Below, one piece after another: positions 14,638 through 63,031 of a stretch of DNA of 64,000 nucleotides. The stretch lies in IMG/VR virus record IMGVR_UViG_3300030041_000009, positions 186,001 through 250,000 of that record. One strand, 5' to 3'. Under the pieces are notes generated by a model. The model was not told the origin of the DNA. It was given only the letters and a program-made list of their open reading frames with translations, and searched no databases. Both the position numbers and the translations under genes were made by a program. How positions within the stretch are numbered: position 1 is the first letter of the stretch; the number at the start of each line of letters is the position of its first letter.

Positions 14638-14949
14638 ATGAAAATACTAAAATTTAATGAGCATCAATTTACAATGTTAGATGATGATGTTATATTAGCA
14701 GGTAGATCTAAATATCCAGTAGGCACTAAAATCAAATTTAAAGAGGATGATGAGTATTTAACTGGTACTCTTACTCATCCATTTGGTTCCTGTAATGGTG
14801 ATGTTGGAGTGTATCTAGATCAAAAAGGAAAGTACGTGGATGATAGATTATGTTTAAAAAACAGAGAATATATAGTTATTGACGACGAAGTTGAAGAATT
14901 TATGAAAGATTATAAATTAAAACAAGATGCAAACAAATTCAATTTATAA
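14638..14949 (+). CDS. KFNL tagged protein (probable start MKILKFNE)
   Basis: TAATATATA at 14624-14632; ends ANKFNL. Confidence 0.8.
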   Translation: MKILKFNEHQFTMLDDDVILAGRSKYPVGTKIKFKEDDEYLTGTLTHPFGSCNGDVGVYLDQKGKYVDDRLCLKNREYIVIDDEVEEFMKDYKLKQDANKFNL

Positions 14950-14995
14950 GTGAAATAACTTATAAAGTGTATTTATAAGTGAAATAGCTTATAAA
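14943..14995. repeat. two tandem 24-bp palindromes
   Basis: TTTATAAG-TGAAATA(A/G)-CTTATAAA at 14943 and 14972. Confidence 0.7.
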
Positions 14996-14996
14996 T

Positions 14997-15035
14997 AAAA
15001 AATCCTATCTAATTTTTCAATTAGATAGGATTTTT
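14997..15035. terminator. bidirectional intrinsic terminator
   Basis: AAAATCCTATCTAATT..AATTAGATAGGATTTT. Confidence 0.8.
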
Positions 15036-15044
15036 ATTTTATAT

Positions 15045-15920
15045 TGCTTGAGAATACAGCATTATAGAGAAGAACTTTAGAAACTATTATTTTTTCTGCT
15101 TCTTTTCCACCAATCTTTTGAATTGGTACTCCTCCAATGACGGTCAATTAGATTCACCACTCCTTTTGTTGTTAATTACTCTCTTAATAATCATTACTCA
15201 TCTAGAATGCCTTCCAGATTAAATCTTGCGGATTTAGAGAACTTTCTTAAAAATCATGTTGGACTTGGGGTCTTTCACGGCTACGACGAATTGCTTCTCA
15301 TAACTAGTAGTCACCTATCACTAACAACAGTCGAACTCTTTTCCTTTATTTGTTTATTTTAATTTGCATTAAATTTGCAGTTAAAGTTTGTTTTGTGGAT
15401 GATGAAAGTAGTGGTTCGACAACCAGCTTCTCAATCTTTTGAACTGAGCTATACTAAACTACTCTCTGAGATATCCCTACCTCCATATTTTAAGTCAACT
15501 AAGATACTCTCGTAACACTTGGTAATGTTAAGGTAACCTTAATTACAGCACCACCTGTACATTGTATTACAATCTAATTTACCTTTCGGTTTTAAGTCAA
15601 CTTTTATATTGGATAACGCAATTACACAACTGGAAATCGTATTTCTTGCAATAATCCTTCAGGTTATTCTTATTGATGTTCCCATCTCACTCAGACTACC
15701 CACATAGCCTTTGCATTAAACCACTTTCTCTACAGTGTTACCCTCGATAATCAAGGTTTAATGATATCCTGATTGTCTGCTCAAGTATTATTGTTTACAA
15801 TTAATTTTATTTCCGAAAAAATAAAATCAACTGCACATTTAATACCGCAAGTTATAGAAACAACTATAACTCACTTTATACTACTTTCGTAGTTTATTTA
15901 TGACTACAGACAGCCAAATA
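15045..15920 (-). ncRNA. candidate large structured ncRNA (~870 nt)
   Basis: No ORF; markedly higher GC than flanks; many hairpins, including GNRA-capped CTAC-GAAA-GTAG, ACC-GAAA-GGT and AAATC(C)-GCAA-GATTT on the minus strand; boxA-like motif upstream and terminator downstream. Confidence 0.7.
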
Positions 15921-15947
15921 TTTTCAATTTTACAAAGAACGCTTTAA

Positions 15948-16087
15948 AAAAACAACAGAATTAATATAGAAGAATTTTAAATAAGACTTAACAAAAGCGA
16001 TAGAAAGACATTAACTTTCTGCTCATTATTGATCCACTTTCCTGGAATTTCAACCTACATAATTTTATATTAATTCATGTTGTTTTA
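15948..16087 (-). ncRNA. candidate rod-shaped small RNA
   Basis: Ends pair: AAAACAACAGAATTAATATA / TATATTAATTCATGTTGTTTT. Confidence 0.45.
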
Positions 16088-16257
16088 AAAGTTCAAGTAC
16101 TTTTACTTGAAAATGTCACAAATCTATTTCAGTCCTTTGTTCTTCACAGAACTTTATCATTGGAACAATAAACATTTGGTTATGTTCATTATATCTACTC
16201 TTGTAATATAAATCCTTGAATTTTTATTACTTTTGCAATATTTACTTTTGTAATATT

Positions 16258-16583
16258 AATCTCTCCTTTTGCAAGCTTCAAGGTGGCTATTGCCTTTGAT
16301 TATTTTTATTACTTTTTCAATTTCATTAATATCTAAGTGTGTTTAATTGCACTATCTCCTTTTGCAAGCTTCAAGGTGGTTTCTATCCCATTAGATTTTT
16401 TAGTTACTTATACAATATTTAATATCTAAGTGTGTTTAATTGCACTATCTCCTTTTGCAAGCTTCAAGGTGGTTTCTATCCCATTAGATTTTAATTGTTT
16501 CAGCAAGATACTTAATATATAAGTTGTGTTCATTTGCACTATCTCCTTTTGCAAGCTTCAAGGTGGTTTTTGTACCATTATAT
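16258..16583 (-). repeat. tandem structured-RNA repeat A: one partial copy plus three 66-67 bp copies at 93-bp period
   Basis: Cores at 16331-16396, 16424-16489, 16517-16583; partial at 16258-16301. Confidence 0.9.
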
Positions 16584-16973
16584 TTTTATTGCTTCAATCT
16601 GAAATTTGATTTGTTTCATTATTGTAGTCCAAATTTACAAAAAGTTTTTTGTTTTACCAAATATTTTTGAATTTTTATACTTTTTTAAATTAATAATAAT
16701 CTTACTAATCATAAATTGAAGTATCACATGGAAGCAATAAACTAGTTTCAATTAGATGATTATTATTTATTAAGTACAAAATTACAAAAAGTTTTTTGTT
16801 TTACCAAATATTTTTGAATTTTTTCTACATTTTTTTCAAGTACTCTTACTTGAAATGAGTATTAAAAAAAATCTTTTATCAGTTCTTTTAGCTTCTCAGC
16901 TTAGAAAAAATAAATTTTCATTTATCATATTTATTCTTGTAATTTAATAATCTTACGATTATTATCATTATCA

Positions 16974-17041
16974 ATCTAAGAGTGTTTAATTGCACTATCT
17001 TTCCTTTTGCAAGCTTCAAGGTGGTTTTTATCCCATTAGAT
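16974..17041 (-). ncRNA. structured repeat A, copy 5
   Basis: Same 68-bp cloverleaf motif just downstream of promoter at ~17085-17120. Confidence 0.75.
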
Positions 17042-17372
17042 TATCTATTAAATCTGAATTATGATTTTCTTTTTTATTGTAGTTCAAATTTACAAAAAGT
17101 TTTTTGTTTTACCAAATATTTTAATGTTAAAGTTTGAACTATTTTTCAAGTACTCCTACTTGTTTTTATCCAAGGAATTTTGATTAAATAATGTTATTAA
17201 ATCATATTATTTAAATTAACAGCTCTTTTTCAAGAGATTTCAATTAATTAATATACATTTTTTAATATTTATTATTTAACCAAAACTCGCTTGTTGTTGG
17301 TTATGAATATCAATAGTGGAACTTACTTTCAGAACAAGTTCTGATTTTCAGTGTTGAAATCAATATTCATAG

Positions 17373-17464
17373 TGAAGATAGAAGGAATTGAACCTTGTGT
17401 CATTGACACTTGCCCCTTCAAATTAGATTATTCTAATAATGATGCACCCTGTGTGCTTATCTCC
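17373..17464 (-). ncRNA. tRNA-like RNA lacking a canonical anticodon loop
   Basis: Acceptor GGAGATA/TATCTTC, D-like GCAC..GTGC, T-arm AAGG-TTCAATT-CCTT. Confidence 0.55.
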
Positions 17465-18076
17465 AACATTTTATAATTTAATCAATAATCAGTCCTTGTA
17501 GTGGAATGAAAGTAGTTAGTCACGTCTCATCTAACATTAGGATTTTATCATATTCGAAATTTAATTCCAATATTCAATCTCCACGGTGTGGTTGCTTTGT
17601 ATATTTATAACAAGATAAGTTCTACATGTCTTATATATCTGTTTCAATGGACTGTCTATCTTTGATAATATTGATTATTTAAGATTATAATCTTATCATT
17701 GACTCACCACTATGAGCTTCTCATTCATCTGGTTGATATATATTTTCTTATAAATATATACACTCAGAGCGCAAATCTCGCTGATATTTCTTGTTTAAAT
17801 CTGATTTTTTGATTTAAATTATTATAGAATAAATTTACAAAAAGTTTTTTGTTTTACCAAATATTTTTGAAAGTATTTTCTATTTTTTCTCAAGTACGTT
17901 TACAAGAGTAAATAAAAATCAAATCATTTTCAGTCCTTTTTATCTTCACAGATTAGAAACAGTAAGTTTGAACTTACTATATTTACTTTTGTAATATTAA
18001 ATTTATTTTCAAGTTTCACTATAAACTTTTTCAAGATTAAAGTTTGTTTCCTTACTACTAAATTATTATTACATTA

Positions 18077-18144
18077 ATCTAAGTGTGTTCATTTGCACTA
18101 TCTATACTCTCGCAAGCTTTGAGTTGGTTTTTGTACCATTAGAT
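18077..18144 (-). ncRNA. structured repeat A, copy 6 (diverged, compensatory changes)
   Basis: Inner stem ACTC/GAGT replaces CCTT/AAGG. Confidence 0.75.
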
Positions 18145-18850
18145 TTTTTTCAATCTGAAGTTTGATTTGTTTTTTATTGTAGTTCAAAGTTACAAAAAGT
18201 TTTTTGTTTTACCAAATATTTTAATGTTAAAGTTTGAACTTTTTTCAATTGAAATTTAATTTTTTAAAACTATATTTCTTTTTGAATTGTAGTTCAAAGT
18301 TACAAAAAGTTTTTTGTTTTACCAAATATTTTTGAAAGTTTTTTCTACTTTTTTTCAATTAAAATATAATTTTTATAATTACTTTTCTTTTGATGTTGTA
18401 GTTCAAAATTACAAAAAGTTTTTTGTTTTACCAAATATTTAATGTTAAAGTTTTGAACTTTTTTTCTCAAGTACTCTTACTTGATATTTTTTGTTGTAGA
18501 ATAAAATTACAAAAAGTTTTTTGTTTTACCAAATATTTAATGATAAAGTTTTGAAGTTTTTTTTTTTCAATACTATTACTTAAAAATTTTTGTTTTTTTA
18601 TTGTAGAATAAAATTATAAAAATGTTTTCATTTCACCAAATATTTAATGTTAAAGTTTTGAAATTTTTTTCAAGTCCTCTTATTAAATTATCAAATCAAC
18701 TAAGATATTTATTATTTTTCTTAGTTGATTTGATTGTAAATAATTACATTTGTTTTTGTTTGTGATGCAAAATTACTAAAAGTTTTCATATCACCAAATA
18801 TTTTAGTGTTAAATTTTAAAATATTTTTTAAATATTTATATATCAATAAA

Positions 18851-19180
18851 TTAATATTCTATATCGTAATAAAAACATAAATCTTTCATTGAGAAAAATA
18901 CTAATGTATCATTATTAGTTGCAAAATCAACTTCTTTATCTGCTCCGCTTGATTCTCCTGGTAATCTTAATATACAATCACAACTTTTTATCCATTCTAA
19001 ATCTAATTTCAACCAATCTTCATATGGTCTGGGATGATGCATATGTTGAAAATGGAAATATAATGGAACGAATGGCGCAAATCCTTTATTTATTAATTCA
19101 TCTGCCATATCAATTTGAGTTTTGACATTAACTGCAGGATCTCCTTTTGTATAAGGAGATGCAATATAAACTTTAATCAT
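18851..19180 (-). CDS. nucleoside deoxyribosyltransferase-like / DUF4406-type protein
   Basis: VYIASPYT, DLEWIKSCD..LRLPGESSGADKE. Confidence 0.75.
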   Translation of the reverse strand: MIKVYIASPYTKGDPAVNVKTQIDMADELINKGFAPFVPLYFHFQHMHHPRPYEDWLKLDLEWIKSCDCILRLPGESSGADKEVDFATNNDTLVFFSMKDLCFYYDIEY

Positions 19181-19403
19181 ATTATTTATTTTATTTTTAT
19201 ACTAAAAATTCTAATGCAAGAAAAGCTAACACAAGAAGAATAACGCCAATTGTCATAATTATATTATTAGTTCTTTGAGTTTTACATGTACAATTTTTAT
19301 TTTTATGCCCACAAACTTCACATATCATATCGTCATTAATATCTTCTAACCATTTTTTATCGTCCTGCATATTTGATTTTTATTTTTTAATATATATGGT
19401 ATT

Positions 19404-22495: not shown

Positions 22496-24145
22496 ATGTT
22501 AAACTATAATGATTATAATAAACTAAATGAAGCTTTTTTTCATCGTAGTAAAGATGAATTGGAAAACCTTATTCATTCTTTTAAAAGCTTAATTATAAAT
22601 TTGAAGCAATCTATTGATAAAAAATACACATTAGATTTCTATAAAACTCAAATTAAAGAAGATTTAGAATCATATAAAACATATTTATTAAATAATTATA
22701 ATAAAAATACTATGGGTAAATTTAAAGATTTATTTAAAGATTTTTTAAATAATGTAGATGATGATATAATTAAACAGATGAGATTAGGTAAATTTGCTAA
22801 TGATATTCTAAAAATATATTCTATAACAAATTCATTTGATATTAATATAAAGAATGCAGATAGTGTTTTCAAAGCATATCTTGATAATGTTGATAGATAT
22901 ATAGATAACACTTATGAATTTTTCTACAATAAAATTGAAACTGATAAGTCATATGAACCATATAATAAAATAGATATTAAAATAAATAAAGTACCTTTTG
23001 ATGATTATCAAAAAACAAAATATAAATATCAAATAGAATTATTGAAATTACAAGAGTGGATTGTATATAATAATAAAAAAGTGTTAATTATATTTGAAGG
23101 TAGAGATGCAGCAGGAAAAGGATCTGCAATTAGAAATATAACAAGATTTCTTGATCCTAAGCATTTTAAAGTTCAAACTTTTGGTATTCCTTCAGAAGAA
23201 GAAAGTGATAATTGGTTTGAAAGATATGAAAAAGTGTTACCTAAAAACGGTGAAATTGTGTTCTTTGATAGATCTTGGTATACAAGAGGTTATGTAGAAC
23301 CTGTAATGGGATATTCAAATGAAGATAAATATAATAAATTCATGAAAGAAGTCAATAATTTTGAAGATAAATTAATTGATGATGATATAATACTTATAAA
23401 AATATGGTTTTCTATATCTCAGGATGTACAAAAAATGAGGTTTGAATTAAGAAAATCTAACCCATTAAAATATTGGAAATTTAGTAAGAATGATGAACAA
23501 ACTTTAGATAAATGGGACGAATTTACTAAATATATAAATGAAATTTTCAAAAAAACAAATACTAAAAATGCTCCTTGGATAATAATAGATGCAGATGATG
23601 AAAATTATTCCAGATTAGAATCATTTAATGGTATAATAAAAACTATTGAAAAAGATAAAGAAAAAGAAAAAGATGGAGGAATAAAAGTAATATTTGAAGA
23701 TATTGATGGACCACTTATTCCTTATAATAAAAATTCTGATGTAAATTATCATAAATTTTTTAATGAGCCTGATAAATGGAGTAAAACTGCCATGAGTAAT
23801 TTAAACACAATAATTGAAAAAACAGATGCTAAAGTTGTTTTATCTTCATCATATAGAGATGATAAACCTAAAAGTAAAATAGAAGATATGATGAAAAAAG
23901 CAGGTTTTAAATATAAAATATATGACTGTGTTCCAAATGACAAATCTAAAAAAAGAGGTGCCGATATAAAAGATTGGTTGAAAAATAATAAAATAGTTAG
24001 TAATTTTATAATTATAGATGATAATAAGCATGATTTATATGATGTATTTAATAAAAAACATATTGTTAAAACCACTCATGAATTAGGTATAACAGATGAT
24101 ATTATGAATGAAGCAATTGAAAAGTTAAATAATAATAATAAATAA
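22496..24145 (+). CDS. ppk2: polyphosphate kinase 2 fused to a C-terminal HAD-like domain
   Basis: FEGRDAAGKG Walker A, FFDRSWY, PLKYWKFS, APWIII; C-terminal IFEDIDGPL, VLSSS, RGADI..WL, FIIIDD. Confidence 0.88.
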   Translation: MLNYNDYNKLNEAFFHRSKDELENLIHSFKSLIINLKQSIDKKYTLDFYKTQIKEDLESYKTYLLNNYNKNTMGKFKDLFKDFLNNVDDDIIKQMRLGKFANDILKIYSITNSFDINIKNADSVFKAYLDNVDRYIDNTYEFFYNKIETDKSYEPYNKIDIKINKVPFDDYQKTKYKYQIELLKLQEWIVYNNKKVLIIFEGRDAAGKGSAIRNITRFLDPKHFKVQTFGIPSEEESDNWFERYEKVLPKNGEIVFFDRSWYTRGYVEPVMGYSNEDKYNKFMKEVNNFEDKLIDDDIILIKIWFSISQDVQKMRFELRKSNPLKYWKFSKNDEQTLDKWDEFTKYINEIFKKTNTKNAPWIIIDADDENYSRLESFNGIIKTIEKDKEKEKDGGIKVIFEDIDGPLIPYNKNSDVNYHKFFNEPDKWSKTAMSNLNTIIEKTDAKVVLSSSYRDDKPKSKIEDMMKKAGFKYKIYDCVPNDKSKKRGADIKDWLKNNKIVSNFIIIDDNKHDLYDVFNKKHIVKTTHELGITDDIMNEAIEKLNNNNK

Positions 24146-28994: not shown

Positions 28995-29029
28995 AAAAAG
29001 AGTTGTGATTTAAATCACAACTCTTTTTT
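28995..29029. terminator. bidirectional intrinsic terminator
   Basis: AAAAAAGAGTTGTGATT..AATCACAACTCTTTTTT. Confidence 0.8.
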
Positions 29030-29751
29030 TATTTTTGAAATGATGGTTTCAACCACATCTTAGTATGATTAAATACATAATCTCTCAATTCAGGAAATTC
29101 ATTCAACATCAAAATTGTTTTTAATGTATCAAATTTAAAACACTTGGTAAGTTCATCTTGAATTCTTTCATTTGAAACTACTTGCATTTTTGATTCATAA
29201 TCATAATTTTTAATAGCAACTTCAATATCATCAGTCATTCTGAAACCTTTTGTAATACAAAAACGCTCACAACGTAAAATCCGTAATGGATCCTCATCAA
29301 ATGTAAGTTGGCAAGGTCTTGGCGTTCTAAGAATACCCATTTTAAGATCTTTTACTCCATCAAATAAATCAATCAAATTTTCATCTTCATCAAGTGCCAT
29401 AGCATTCAATGTGAAATCACGTCTGATTAAATCATCTTCAAGTGTACCAAGTTCTAAAATTGGACGTCTTGTTCCTTCGTAATAACCAATTTCCTTTCTA
29501 GCCATTACAAAATCTGCAGTTAACCCTTCATGCTTATGTCCTTTTGGAAACTTTGCTTTGATTGTGAAACATCTTGGAGTTGAATTATATACGGTGTAGC
29601 CATTTTTACGTAACCACAAGTCCATTGACATGAATCCAGATTCAACTGATTGATTCTTGTCATCCAATACAAAAGTAAAGTCTATATCTTTACAATCAAC
29701 TCCTAAGATACGGTCACGTACACATCCGCCCACTTCATAAATTTTTGGCAT
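29029..29751 (-). CDS. cca: tRNA nucleotidyltransferase (CCA-adding/poly(A) polymerase class II), catalytic half without HD domain
   Basis: VGGCVRD, KDIDF, DLIRRDFTLNAMA, EDPLRILR, SNERI. Confidence 0.88.
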   Translation of the reverse strand: MPKIYEVGGCVRDRILGVDCKDIDFTFVLDDKNQSVESGFMSMDLWLRKNGYTVYNSTPRCFTIKAKFPKGHKHEGLTADFVMARKEIGYYEGTRRPILELGTLEDDLIRRDFTLNAMALDEDENLIDLFDGVKDLKMGILRTPRPCQLTFDEDPLRILRCERFCITKGFRMTDDIEVAIKNYDYESKMQVVSNERIQDELTKCFKFDTLKTILMLNEFPELRDYVFNHTKMWLKPSFQK

Positions 29752-30378: not shown

Positions 30379-31317
30379 TTAGAAGAAATTAGCAGCATCA
30401 ATATATTTGAATCCACATCTTTTAGCAAATGTTTTATCACTTGTTAAATCTCCAACCATTATGCATTGAGATGGATCAAGTTTATATTTTTCAATAAATT
30501 CTATTCCTAGTCCAACTCCTGGTTTTCTACAATAGCAAGTTATTGGAGGAACTGAATGCCCACAATATTTATAATCAATATTAACTCCTAGCATTTCATT
30601 TGTTTTTTCAAAACAAGCTATTGCTGTATCATTAGATAATAATCCTTTTGCTATTCCACTTTGATTTGAAACTCCAAGTAATATATAACCTTGACTTTGT
30701 AATTCTAAAAGTTTTTCTGTTCTACCTGGAATTATTTCAATATCACTAATATCAGTTGGATAATGTTCACCACTTTTAGTTAATCTCAATGTACCATCAT
30801 AATCAAATAAAATTGCTTTATTTTTATATTCTGATGAATAACGTTTAAAATCTATTTTTTCTATATCATCAATACCTTCTGATAATTCAGGTGCTTCAAA
30901 ATTTTTATTAATTTTATAAAGTGCAGCAACAGGAAACATATGTGGATCATTAGAGTTAGAATATTCACTTAATTCTGTGAATAATTTACCATATTTTCTT
31001 ATCATTCTTGTTACCTGATTGAACATACAATCTTCAATTTTTGTAGTAAAATGAATACATAATATATAATAATTATATTTTTTTGCTAATTCAATAACAT
31101 CAGCCCTAGATAATTTAGTTGAATATGTTCCATCTAATACAATATCCACGCCATCTAACATTAATTGTTCAAGTTTTTTATTAAGAGAACTTAATGTATC
31201 TCCTTCAATATCTCTTGATAGTAATGTACATTTATAATCAACATATTTTTCAATGATGCTTGATTTACCTGCTGCTGGTAATCCACAAGATATGACTAAT
31301 TTTTTATCTTTTTTCAT
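30379..31317 (-). CDS. polynucleotide kinase / HAD phosphatase (PNKP-like)
   Basis: GLPAAGKS P-loop, VLDGT; HAD FDYDGTL, SNQSG, CRKP, MVGD. Confidence 0.85.
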   Translation of the reverse strand: MKKDKKLVISCGLPAAGKSSIIEKYVDYKCTLLSRDIEGDTLSSLNKKLEQLMLDGVDIVLDGTYSTKLSRADVIELAKKYNYYILCIHFTTKIEDCMFNQVTRMIRKYGKLFTELSEYSNSNDPHMFPVAALYKINKNFEAPELSEGIDDIEKIDFKRYSSEYKNKAILFDYDGTLRLTKSGEHYPTDISDIEIIPGRTEKLLELQSQGYILLGVSNQSGIAKGLLSNDTAIACFEKTNEMLGVNIDYKYCGHSVPPITCYCRKPGVGLGIEFIEKYKLDPSQCIMVGDLTSDKTFAKRCGFKYIDAANFF

Positions 31318-62927: not shown

Positions 62928-62960
62928 AAAAATAAATATACCTTATGAAAAATATATTTG

Positions 62961-63031
62961 TGCTCACTATCGGATTCAAACCGATGTAGGTAGTTTTAGA
63001 GGCTACCGCCCTATCACTGGACTAAATGAGC
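62961..63031 (-). tRNA. tRNA with CUA anticodon (amber suppressor), no encoded CCA
   Basis: Acceptor GCTCATT/AGTGAGC+A, D-stem GTCC/GGGC, anticodon arm GTAGC-CTCTAAA-ACTAC, T-arm ATCGG-TTTGAAT-CCGAT; 71 nt. Confidence 0.85.

What the first reader, a model, noticed from the sequence alone, without database searches (positions are those of the whole stretch)
18177..18804. Six promoters stacked at ~100-160 bp with nothing encoded between them
Seen: near-identical 45-bp units, several accompanied by a CAAGTA-N4-TACTTG palindrome (also at 16094, 16837, 17147); some have a TTTA instead of TTTG -7 box. Inference: an RNA polymerase sink or loading zone, an expression amplifier for the ncRNAs, or iteron-like origin repeats.
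Basis: partly seen in the sequence, partly recalled or inferred. Interest (0 to 1): 0.6.

Follow-up and report, generated by a model that had tools for sequence, protein, structure and literature searches.

The report
Stacked host-type promoters heading phage RNA operon
The six repeats are same-direction copies of a Bacteroidota ribosomal-RNA-type promoter, read on the minus strand, stacked at the head of a huge phage's non-coding RNA operon that ends in the giant GOLLD RNA; this looks like an enlarged version of the tandem promoters bacteria put before rRNA genes.

Summary
Window 18165-18804 holds six co-oriented promoter-like units, 98-158 bp apart, with no credible gene or known RNA between them. 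The array is 100% identical in eight other assemblies.

Read on the minus strand, each unit is TTTG-N20-TAnnTTTG, the Bacteroidota sigma-A promoter. Four more copies lie downstream (16630-17861), so ten sit in a 3.8-kb ORF-free island. That island carries cloverleaf-like small RNAs, a ~650-nt unknown RNA, a boxA-like element, GOLLD RNA and a single strong terminator.

The same promoter class (TTTGGTGnAATGAAAA-N8-TAnnTTTG) sits in front of tRNA and rRNA genes in Bacteroidota genomes. Tandem pairs to quadruples of such promoters, about 90 bp apart, recur in 83 viral stretches against 2 for a reversed-pattern control. Twenty-five of the 72 pairs outside this phage group lead straight into boxA-like + GOLLD.

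Sister lineages carry three stacked units, and one contig carries at least ten. I read the stack as an amplified rrn-style tandem promoter array that loads host RNA polymerase into the phage ncRNA operon.

An origin or iteron reading is not supported.

The parts
18768..18798 (-). Promoter unit P10 (variant): TTTG-N19-TAATTTTG; predicted start about 18763. Its -33 region (TTTGGTGATATGAAAAC) resembles the host stable-RNA promoter class.
   Evidence: class comparison
18691..18733 (-). Strong 16-bp hairpin between P10 and P9 (-25.7 kcal/mol, z -7.2), with no U-tract after it. Function unknown.
18609..18640 (-). Promoter unit P9 (variant): TTTGGTGAAATGAAAAC...TAATTTTA, with A instead of G at -5. 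Predicted start about 18604. A degenerate palindrome remnant (~18568-18583) lies in the interval downstream of it; the ~18671-18686 remnant lies upstream.
18502..18533 (-). Promoter unit P8: exact 27-mer core, -7 box TAATTTTA (A at -5). Predicted start about 18497.
18468..18483 (.). Perfect palindrome CAAGTA-N4-TACTTG between P8 and P7. As RNA it is a 7-9 bp hairpin followed by an A-run, so it is not a canonical terminator on either strand.
18404..18435 (-). Promoter unit P7: exact core, TAATTTTG. Predicted start about 18399. Followed by an AU-rich three-tier hairpin.
18295..18326 (-). Promoter unit P6: exact core, TAACTTTG. Predicted start about 18290. Followed by an AU-rich hairpin (z -4.6).
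18185..18216 (-). Promoter unit P5: exact core, TAACTTTG. Predicted start 18180. It is the last unit of the stack and leads into the first cloverleaf-like RNA.
18077..18144 (-). Cloverleaf-like small RNA ('D3'), divergent copy.
17830..17861 (-). Promoter unit P4: exact core, TAAATTTA. A degenerate palindrome lies at 17891-17906 upstream.
17165..17825 (-). About 650 nt of ORF-free sequence, 82% mean column identity across three lineages, with no Rfam match. Candidate unknown ncRNA.
17085..17116 (-). Promoter unit P3, with the perfect palindrome 17147-17162 upstream. Followed by D3 copy 16974-17041.
16777..16808 (-). Promoter unit P2, with the perfect palindrome 16837-16852 upstream.
16630..16661 (-). 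Promoter unit P1, leading into the tandem D3 array.
16255..16583 (-). Tandem array of cloverleaf-like D3 RNAs, period 93: three full copies (16517-16583, 16424-16489, 16331-16396) and one truncated copy.
16094..16109 (.). Perfect palindrome at the end of the D3 cassette, upstream of GOLLD. No canonical promoter lies between it and GOLLD.
15930..15940 (-). boxA-like GTTCTTTGTAA at the 5' edge of GOLLD. It is conserved in position in lineages B and C and in the distant phage L022.
15045..15945 (-). GOLLD RNA. The Rfam model covers 15045-15466 (279 bits). The 5' domain is inferred by similarity to other GOLLD loci.
14998..15035 (.). The only canonical intrinsic terminator of the island: a 17-bp stem flanked by T-runs, usable in both directions.

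Best explanation
The six units are tandem, co-directional promoters for the host (Bacteroidota) primary-sigma RNA polymerase. They belong to the promoter class that Bacteroidota use for rRNA and tRNA genes. They head a roughly 3.8-kb non-coding operon on the minus strand, laid out as follows:
- the stack
- a cloverleaf-like RNA
- promoter and a ~650-nt RNA
- promoter and a cloverleaf-like RNA
- two promoters and a cloverleaf array
- a boxA-like element and GOLLD
- a terminator

Each unit can hold its own polymerase, because the 98-110 bp spacing exceeds the roughly 75-bp footprint of an open complex. Initiations would then add up, and everything downstream, GOLLD most of all, would be made at very high level. 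This is what rrn P1-P2 does in bacteria and what A1-A2-A3 does in phage T7.

The 'empty' units arose by tandem duplication or unequal crossing-over of promoter-plus-hairpin modules. The ancestral state was about three units, and this lineage has five to six.

Shown: the sequence anatomy, the class membership by sequence, the recurrence in relatives and other phages, and the copy-number variation. Inferred: that each unit fires, that transcription reads through the palindromes, and that output is additive.
For: 1. Geometry. Nine units are TTTG-N20-TA(A)nTTT(G/A) and one has N19. This matches the -33 TTTG / -7 TAnnTTTG consensus with T-12, A-11, T-8, T-7, T-6 and G-5 (PMC6847099; PMC7366714).

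2. Use elsewhere in this phage. TTTG-N20-TAnnTTTG occurs 19 times in the record against 4.4 +/- 2.0 expected. Copies outside the island lie 20-45 nt before ATG starts.

3. Host class. TTTGGTGnAATGAAAA-N8-TAnnTTTG, which units P9 and P10 resemble, gave at least 119 stretches in prokaryote genomes, nearly all Bacteroidota. Of 97 assessable sites, 30 are followed by a tRNA within 200 nt and 15 by 16S rRNA within 1.2 kb.

4. Conservation. The majority fraction is 0.95 over the core (-36 to -5) against about 0.6 in the flanks, across 21 units from three lineages that are only about 80% identical overall.

5. Stacks elsewhere. Tandem pairs 87-117 bp apart occur in 83 viral stretches against 2 for the reversed-pattern control. 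Chains comprise 53 pairs, 12 triples and 1 quadruple.

6. Link to GOLLD. Of the 72 pairs outside this phage group, 25 are followed by GTTCTTTGAAA plus the GOLLD 5' motif. Fourteen of 16 loci checked carry Rfam GOLLD.

7. Host analogue. A Capnocytophaga gingivalis rRNA operon has three such promoters about 90 bp apart.

8. Relatives. A distant 634-kb phage has the same promoter class before tRNAs and GOLLD, including a 91-bp 'empty' pair.

9. One exit. The only canonical terminator follows GOLLD, and no canonical promoter lies between the last palindrome and GOLLD.

10. Copy number. Sister lineages have three stacked units and contig L279 has at least ten.

11. Expression hint. Nine metatranscriptome runs from different studies hold 43-55% of the island's 31-mers.
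Against: - There is no transcription start, coverage or occupancy evidence.
- Three of the ten units (two of them in the stack) have A at the nearly invariant G-5 and may be weak or dead.
- Sister lineages manage with three units, so the extra copies may be neutral.
- Perfect identity of the cores could reflect recent duplication or gene conversion rather than selection.
- Closely stacked promoters can occlude one another, so output need not be additive.
- The palindromes and hairpins between units are unexplained. They could be partial terminators or regulator sites that uncouple the cassettes.
- The 214-kb record is only about 30% of the genome, so a phage sigma factor or polymerase elsewhere cannot be excluded.
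Confidence: 0.6

Rival explanations
1. Neutral by-product. The units are promoter copies, but the extra ones in the stack are selectively neutral debris of unequal recombination between repeated promoter-plus-hairpin modules. Some are already decaying, and they add nothing useful to expression.
For: Copy number differs between close lineages: 3, 3, 5-6 and at least 10. Two stack units carry the G-5 to A change, which is absent from lineages B and C. Short shared runs such as TTGAAAAAAA flank the modules and could drive unequal crossing-over. Intervals are poorly conserved, with a majority fraction of about 0.6.
Against: At least three stacked units are retained in every lineage despite about 20% divergence. 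Stacks of two to four recur in dozens of unrelated phage contigs and in a host rRNA operon. Promoter cores stay 95-100% identical while the flanks drift. The array is invariant across at least six samples.
Confidence: 0.2
2. Decoy or sponge. The array mainly titrates host RNA polymerase sigma-A holoenzyme, or regulators of rRNA promoters, away from host stable-RNA operons. It would contribute to host takeover, and the transcripts themselves would be secondary.
For: The units mimic the host rRNA/tRNA promoter class. Ten copies per genome would be multiplied by phage genome copy number. 'Empty' units yield no obvious product.
Against: In 25 other phage loci the stacks sit directly in front of GOLLD, which points to a productive role. 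Nothing here measures titration. It is also not exclusive with the main explanation.
Confidence: 0.08
3. Regulated switch region. The palindromes (CAAGTA-N4-TACTTG) and the inverted repeat inside the promoter spacer (ACAAAAA-AC-TTTTTGT) are operators for a phage or host dimeric regulator. The stack would then be a cooperative binding platform that times ncRNA expression.
For: The perfect palindromes occur only in this island. They lie 28-32 bp upstream of the -33 element of four units. The spacer is conserved far beyond what sigma recognition needs.
Against: Palindrome-to-promoter distance is not fixed. Several stack units lack an intact palindrome. No DNA-binding protein gene was found next to the island. 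Part of the spacer conservation is explained by the extended -33 motif shared with host promoters.
Confidence: 0.1
4. Short functional RNAs. Each stacked unit makes a roughly 100-nt RNA whose hairpin is the product.
For: Every interval folds into a hairpin 10-50 nt after the predicted start, with z from -1.8 to -4.6 (-7.2 for the P10-P9 interval). The only exception is the P9-P8 interval, at z -0.5. The AU hairpin is kept with different inner-stem sequences in lineages W, B and C.
Against: The hairpins are weak and AT-rich, and none is followed by a terminator. Two different hairpin types are interchangeable. No Rfam match. Other phages' intervals are unrelated in sequence.
Confidence: 0.07
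5. Replication origin with iteron-like repeats.
For: Direct repeats in an AT-rich, gene-free region.
Against: The period is 98-158 bp, not about 20. Each unit is a complete promoter that is also used before RNA genes. There is no initiator gene nearby. The cumulative GC-skew extreme lies at window ~30 kb, not 18 kb. The same stacks precede GOLLD or ordinary genes in other phages.
Confidence: 0.02

Closest known systems
Tandem rRNA operon promoters with a boxA leader (E. coli rrn P1-P2; here also the Capnocytophaga gingivalis rrn with three promoters)
   Same: Several complete primary-sigma promoters point the same way about 90-120 bp apart, with nothing encoded between them. They feed one untranslated stable-RNA operon that carries a GTTCTTTGAAA-type element in its leader, then tRNA(-like) units and a large structured RNA. 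The E. coli details are from my own knowledge.
   Different: There are six units in the stack and ten in the island rather than two or three. The operon belongs to a phage. The products are GOLLD, cloverleaf-like RNAs and an unknown RNA, not rRNA. Extra promoters are scattered inside the operon.
Phage T7 early promoters A1, A2, A3
   Same: Strong host-polymerase promoters are stacked about 125 bp apart at the head of one phage transcription unit, with no genes between them (my own knowledge).
   Different: T7 has three, and they drive early protein genes. Here there are five or six and they drive non-coding RNAs. The timing of expression is unknown.
Bacteroidota primary-sigma (sigma-ABfr) promoter, -33 TTTG / -7 TAnnTTTG
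   Same: Both elements, their spacing and the A/T-rich upstream region match.
   Different: Three units have A at -5. The extended -33 region is a derived variant (TTTGGTAAAACAAAAA) of the host stable-RNA form (TTTGGTGGAATGAAAA).
GOLLD RNA loci in phages near tRNA islands
   Same: GOLLD is present (279 bits) in a phage, next to tRNA-like elements, as reported for GOLLD generally.
   Different: No promoter architecture for GOLLD turned up in the searchable literature. Here true tRNAs are replaced by a 66-nt cloverleaf-like RNA.
Iteron arrays of plasmid and phage origins
   Same: Direct repeats in an AT-rich non-coding stretch.
   Different: Unit length, spacing, content (a full promoter) and context all differ. 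There is no initiator gene and no skew shift.

Membership tests
Bacteroidota sigma-ABfr promoter | -7 element TAnnTTTG (T-12, A-11, T-8, T-7, T-6, G-5) | tested here: met
   Seven of ten units match fully, four of them in the stack. Three have A at -5. Consensus from PMC6847099.
Bacteroidota sigma-ABfr promoter | -33 element TTTG at the right distance from the -7 element | tested here: met
   The G of TTTG falls at -33 with a 20-nt spacer in nine units and a 19-nt spacer in one. N20 is the only enriched spacing genome-wide: 19 observed against 4.4 expected.
Bacteroidota sigma-ABfr promoter | Occurs in front of transcribed genes of Bacteroidota or their phages | tested here: met
   The host class precedes tRNA at 30 sites and 16S at 15 of 97 assessable sites. 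In this phage it precedes ORFs and structured RNAs.
Bacteroidota sigma-ABfr promoter | Transcription starts about 5 nt after G-5 and depends on the holoenzyme | not testable with these tools
Tandem (rrn/T7-type) promoter array | Two or more complete promoters, same orientation, about 150 bp or less apart, no gene between | tested here: met
   Six units 98-158 bp apart, with no ORF or Rfam hit between them.
Tandem (rrn/T7-type) promoter array | All feed one downstream transcription unit | tested here: inconclusive
   Orientation is the same and the single canonical terminator lies after GOLLD. Read-through of the palindromic hairpins is not shown.
Tandem (rrn/T7-type) promoter array | Each promoter is active | not testable with these tools
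   No 5'-end data.
rRNA-type antitermination leader (boxA) | boxA sequence in the leader, as in host rRNA operons | tested here: met
   GTTCTTTGTAA at 15930-15940. GTTCTTTGAAA occurs in 13/14 host 16S leaders against 0/73 other host loci, and in 25/25 phage GOLLD leaders against 0/47 other tandem-promoter loci. The window match alone is not above chance.
rRNA-type antitermination leader (boxA) | Binds NusB/NusE and confers antitermination | not testable with these tools
   Needs biochemistry or genetics.
Iteron origin | Short (about 17-22 bp) repeats at roughly helical spacing next to an initiator gene | tested here: not met
   The period is 98-158 bp. Neighbours are deoxyribosyltransferase-like, ankyrin, LRR and nuclease genes.
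Iteron origin | Strand-composition switch at the site | tested here: not met
   The cumulative GC-skew maximum is at G000 38 kb (window ~30 kb). The record is only about 30% complete.
GOLLD RNA (RF02032) | Match to the curated covariance model above the gathering score | tested here: met
   278.9 bits against a cut-off of 150, full model length.

The most novel reading that the evidence does not exclude
Bacteroidota phages build an 'rRNA-operon mimic': amplified arrays of the host's stable-RNA promoter plus a boxA leader. This would make the host's rRNA-synthesis machinery (high-initiation promoters and Nus-type antitermination) mass-produce GOLLD nanocage RNA and tRNA-like RNAs. At the same time it would compete with host rRNA promoters for polymerase. 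Promoter copy number (2 to at least 10) would be an evolvable dial for that output.
Probability: 0.3. Interest if true: 0.75.

Novelty: new variant of a known kind. Interest (0 to 1): 0.55.

Why it matters
GOLLD has been known since 2009 and was recently shown to form a 14-mer RNA cage, but its function and the way phages express it are still open.

This locus, and at least 25 others, suggest a concrete and testable expression logic: stacked host rRNA/tRNA-type promoters, a boxA-like leader, tRNA-like elements and one terminator.

That gives experimenters a promoter cassette for making GOLLD in Bacteroidota hosts. It gives a prediction of Nus-dependent antitermination. It also offers a natural series of 2, 3, 4, 6 and 10 stacked promoters for studying how tandem promoters add up or interfere.

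The extended -33 motif TTTGGTGGAATGAAAA, shared by host stable-RNA genes and phages, may also be useful for promoter annotation and engineering in Bacteroidota.

Tried and rejected
- Sigma-70 scan. The number of -35/-10 matches (41 against 33.8 +/- 5.1) is not meaningful, and none coincides with the units.
- Rfam at E<=5 on 14800-19200 found only GOLLD.
- Phage GenBank blastn found only one distant GOLLD hit.
- Exact and degenerate promoter scans of viral and metagenome contigs found the extended unit only in this phage group, lineages A-D.
- ORFs with TAG read as Gln (the window has a CTA-anticodon tRNA) gave nothing credible in the island.
- RNAalifold on a first D3 alignment missed the outer stem because of misregister. 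A re-cut alignment and explicit pair counting resolved it.
- A tRNA-like T-arm inside the ~650-nt RNA was considered and dropped, because the pairing is not kept in lineages B and C.
- Sigma factor and RNA polymerase beta searches in the 214-kb record were negative but inconclusive, since the record is about 30% complete.
- Literature searches for the motif, and for GOLLD with tandem promoters or boxA, found nothing relevant. PMC3177189 did not contain the boxA string in its text, so the general boxA consensus rests on my own knowledge plus the host rRNA leaders.

Full report
**Setting.** The window is the reverse strand of bases 3980-67979 of a 214,510-bp IMG/VR virus record. CheckV rates the record about 30% complete, so it is a fragment of a huge phage. 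It is about 22% G+C. It carries a tRNA with a CTA anticodon and a full-length match to GOLLD RNA on the minus strand at 15045-15466 (279 bits). The same DNA occurs in peat and permafrost metagenomes.

- The region 15,500-18,850 has no credible ORF under table 11 or with TAG read as Gln.
- Within it, 18165-18669 is a tandem array of period ~109, 4.8 copies.
- A 19-nt core occurs 9 times in the window against 0.8 expected.
- The exact 27-mer TTTGGTAAAACAAAAAACTTTTTGTAA occurs 8 times in the 214-kb record, all here and all on one strand.
Four more lie at 17861, 17116, 16808 and 16661.
- The stretch 18160-18808 is 100% identical in eight other assemblies, so it is not an assembly artefact.

**Strand and identity of the units.**
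- Read on the minus strand, the same strand as GOLLD, each unit is TTTG, 20 nt, TA(A)nTTT(G/A).
- This is the Bacteroidota primary-sigma promoter: -33 TTTG and -7 TAnnTTTG, with T-12, A-11, T-8, T-7, T-6 and G-5 nearly invariant (PMC6847099; PMC7366714).
- With a 20-nt spacer, the G of TTTG falls exactly at -33.
- Predicted starts, 5 nt after G-5, fall on the A of a conserved CTACAA at 18763, 18604, 18497, 18399, 18290 and 18180.
- Three units (18640, 18533, 17861) have A at -5. The equivalent units in sister lineages all have G, so these are derived and possibly weaker.
- The phage uses the same geometry elsewhere. TTTG-N20-TAnnTTTG occurs 19 times against 4.4 +/- 2.0 expected, no other spacing is enriched to that degree (N16 comes next, 8 against 3.4 +/- 2.4), and copies outside the island sit 20-45 nt before ATG codons.

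**The promoter class is the host's stable-RNA class.**
- A distant 634-kb phage (LR745206.1) has GOLLD preceded by tRNAs. Each tRNA is behind TTTGGTG(A/G)AATGAAAAAGTCACCGTATATTTG, and that locus includes one 91-bp pair with nothing between.
- The two 'degenerate' units of the stack (TTTGGTGAAATGAAAAC and TTTGGTGATATGAAAAC) resemble that form.
- Scanning for TTTGGTGnAATGAAAA-N8-TAnnTTT(G) gave 66 viral stretches.
- It gave at least 119 stretches in prokaryote genomes, almost all Bacteroidota: Prevotella/Segatella, Bacteroides, Muribaculaceae, Paludibacteraceae, Alistipes, Capnocytophaga and Chitinophagales.
- Of 97 assessable host sites, 30 are followed by a tRNA within 200 nt and 15 by 16S rRNA within 1.2 kb.
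- The eight exact copies in the window are therefore a derived variant (TTTGGTAAAACAAAAA) of a promoter type that hosts use for rRNA and tRNA.
- The A/T pattern upstream of -36 also matches the host profile.
- No sigma factor or polymerase beta subunit was found in the 214-kb fragment. This is weak support for host polymerase use.

**Architecture of the island, minus strand.**
1. Protein genes, 19606 to 18851.
2. The stack, 18798 to 18185.
3. A cloverleaf-like RNA, 18144-18077, plus a tail.
4. A degenerate palindrome, then P4 and about 650 nt of conserved ORF-free sequence (17825-17165; 82% mean column identity across three lineages).
5. A palindrome, then P3 and a cloverleaf RNA.
6. A palindrome, then P2 and P1.
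7. Three full cloverleaf copies and one truncated copy, period 93.
8. A palindrome at 16109-16094.
9. About 150 nt with no canonical promoter.
10. GTTCTTTGTAA at 15940-15930.
11. GOLLD, down to 15045.
12. A 17-bp-stem terminator at 15035-14998, the only canonical terminator in the island.

The palindromes form only 7-9 bp A/U-rich hairpins followed by A-runs. They do not look like terminators on either strand. GOLLD in this lineage therefore appears to depend on promoters at least 700 nt upstream, which fits a single multi-promoter operon.

**Comparative evidence on the stack.**
- Two sister lineages, about 80% identical over the island, each carry three stacked units: 101 and 110 bp apart in L017, and 102 and 114 bp apart in L020.
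- Their modules are of the same two types as in the window: promoter plus palindrome, and promoter plus AU hairpin.
- The window lineage has one extra copy of each module, plus P10.
- A 1376-bp metagenome contig (L279) carries at least ten stacked units of period ~99, and they run into a payload unrelated to this island.
- Across 21 units of the three lineages, the core (-36 to -5) has a majority fraction of 0.95 against about 0.6 in the flanks.

**Stacks are general in Bacteroidota phages.**
- A generic pattern for two TTTGGT-N18-TAnnTTTG promoters 87-117 bp apart hit 83 viral stretches. The same pattern read backwards hit 2.
- Outside this phage group there are 53 pairs, 12 triples and one quadruple, most often 90-92 bp apart.
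- Of 72 pairs, 25 are followed within 200 nt by GTTCTTTGAAA and then by a GOLLD 5' motif. Twenty-five are followed by an ORF and 4 by a tRNA.
- Fourteen of 16 of these loci checked carry Rfam GOLLD at 250-327 bits.
- GTTCTTTGAAA is found in 25/25 GOLLD leaders and 0/47 other tandem-promoter loci. In host genomes it is found in 13/14 16S leaders, about 46 nt after the promoter, and in 0/73 other loci.
- It matches what I recall as the Gram-positive/Mollicutes boxA (GTTCTTTGAAAACT). That part is memory, not a test.
- A Capnocytophaga gingivalis rRNA operon has three of these promoters about 90 bp apart.
- The stack in the window is thus an enlarged case of a recurring design: tandem stable-RNA promoters, a boxA-like leader and a large structured RNA. 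In other words, it mimics an rRNA operon.

**Mechanism proposed.**
- Several polymerases can be loaded at once on units that are 98-110 bp apart (inferred from the known footprint of roughly 75 bp).
- Initiations add up along a common transcription unit.
- The boxA-like element may protect the long untranslated transcript from premature termination.
- The cloverleaf units may act as processing marks. In the distant phage, GOLLD is flanked by two 98%-identical tRNA-like repeats.
- The extra units probably arose by unequal crossing-over between modules.
- None of these activity steps is shown. All that is known is that nine metatranscriptome runs hold 43-55% of the island's 31-mers.

**Rivals.**
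- Neutral duplication debris remains plausible for the extra copies.
- A polymerase or regulator sponge, and an operator platform, are neither excluded nor supported.
- Short hairpin RNAs are weakly suggested by folding.
- An iteron origin is rejected on spacing, content, neighbours and skew.

**Novelty.** Tandem promoters are a known kind (rrn P1-P2, T7 A1-A3). What looks new is a six-to-ten-fold array of the Bacteroidota stable-RNA promoter in a phage, and its regular pairing with a boxA-like leader and GOLLD. I found no description of this in the searchable literature.

Noticed in passing
window 16331-16583, 16974-17041, 18077-18144 (minus strand): A 66-nt repeated RNA folds as a miniature cloverleaf with arms of 6, 3, 4 and 3 bp. 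96% of cells are paired, five pairs show compensatory changes, and 0 of 500 shuffles reach that (for example C-G, A-U and G-C at one outer-stem pair). ARAGORN and Rfam do not call it a tRNA. One loop carries the self-complementary AAGCUU. In a distant relative, true tRNAs occupy the same positions.
   Followed up: partly
window 15930-15940 (minus strand); L022, L017/L009, L020 and 25 other phage loci: GTTCTTTG(A/T)AA sits immediately 5' of GOLLD in every Bacteroidota-phage GOLLD locus examined. The same 11-mer marks host 16S rRNA leaders (13/14) and is absent from other promoter-proximal regions. This suggests GOLLD is transcribed under rRNA-type antitermination.
   Followed up: partly
window 17165-17825 (minus strand): About 650 nt downstream of promoter P4 is ORF-free, has blocks of perfect conservation across three lineages (82% mean column identity overall) and matches no Rfam family. 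It is a candidate new large ncRNA.
   Followed up: partly
prokaryote loci L156-L274; viral loci L096-L155: An extended -33 motif, TTTGGTGGAATGAAAA, followed by N8 and TAnnTTTG, is shared by many Bacteroidota genera and their phages. It is strongly enriched before tRNA and rRNA genes. I found no mention of it in the searchable literature.
   Followed up: partly
L279 (Ga0302321_100474615), 421-1376: A short peat metagenome contig consists mostly of at least ten stacked promoter units of two subtypes, period ~99. They run into about 420 nt of sequence unrelated to this island. The array is cut by the contig end.
   Followed up: partly
L022 5279-5381 and 6474-6576: In the 634-kb phage LR745206.1, GOLLD is bracketed by two 98%-identical copies of a roughly 100-nt tRNA-like element with a long extra arm. 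This may be tRNA-style punctuation for processing.
   Followed up: no
window 62960-63031 (minus strand): A tRNA with anticodon CTA (reads TAG), which hints at stop-codon reassignment or suppression in part of this phage. Not examined further.
   Followed up: no
window 22496-24145 (+), 29029-29751 (-), 30379-31317 (-): RNA-repair or tRNA-maturation-type genes lie near the island: PPK2 fused to a 'Swiss Army Knife RNA repair' HAD domain, a poly(A) polymerase/CCA-adding head domain protein, and a polynucleotide kinase-phosphatase-like protein.
   Followed up: no
L290, L292, L302, L308, L321, L326, L335, L339, L342, L346, L348: Many of the other phage contigs with tandem promoters and GOLLD also carry a tmRNA gene within about 1-4 kb of GOLLD, on the opposite strand.
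   Followed up: no
window 18691-18733: A perfect 16-bp hairpin (-25.7 kcal/mol, z -7.2) lies between units P10 and P9 with no U-tract after it. In lineage B the equivalent place holds a roughly 110-aa ORF driven by the same promoter type.
   Followed up: partly
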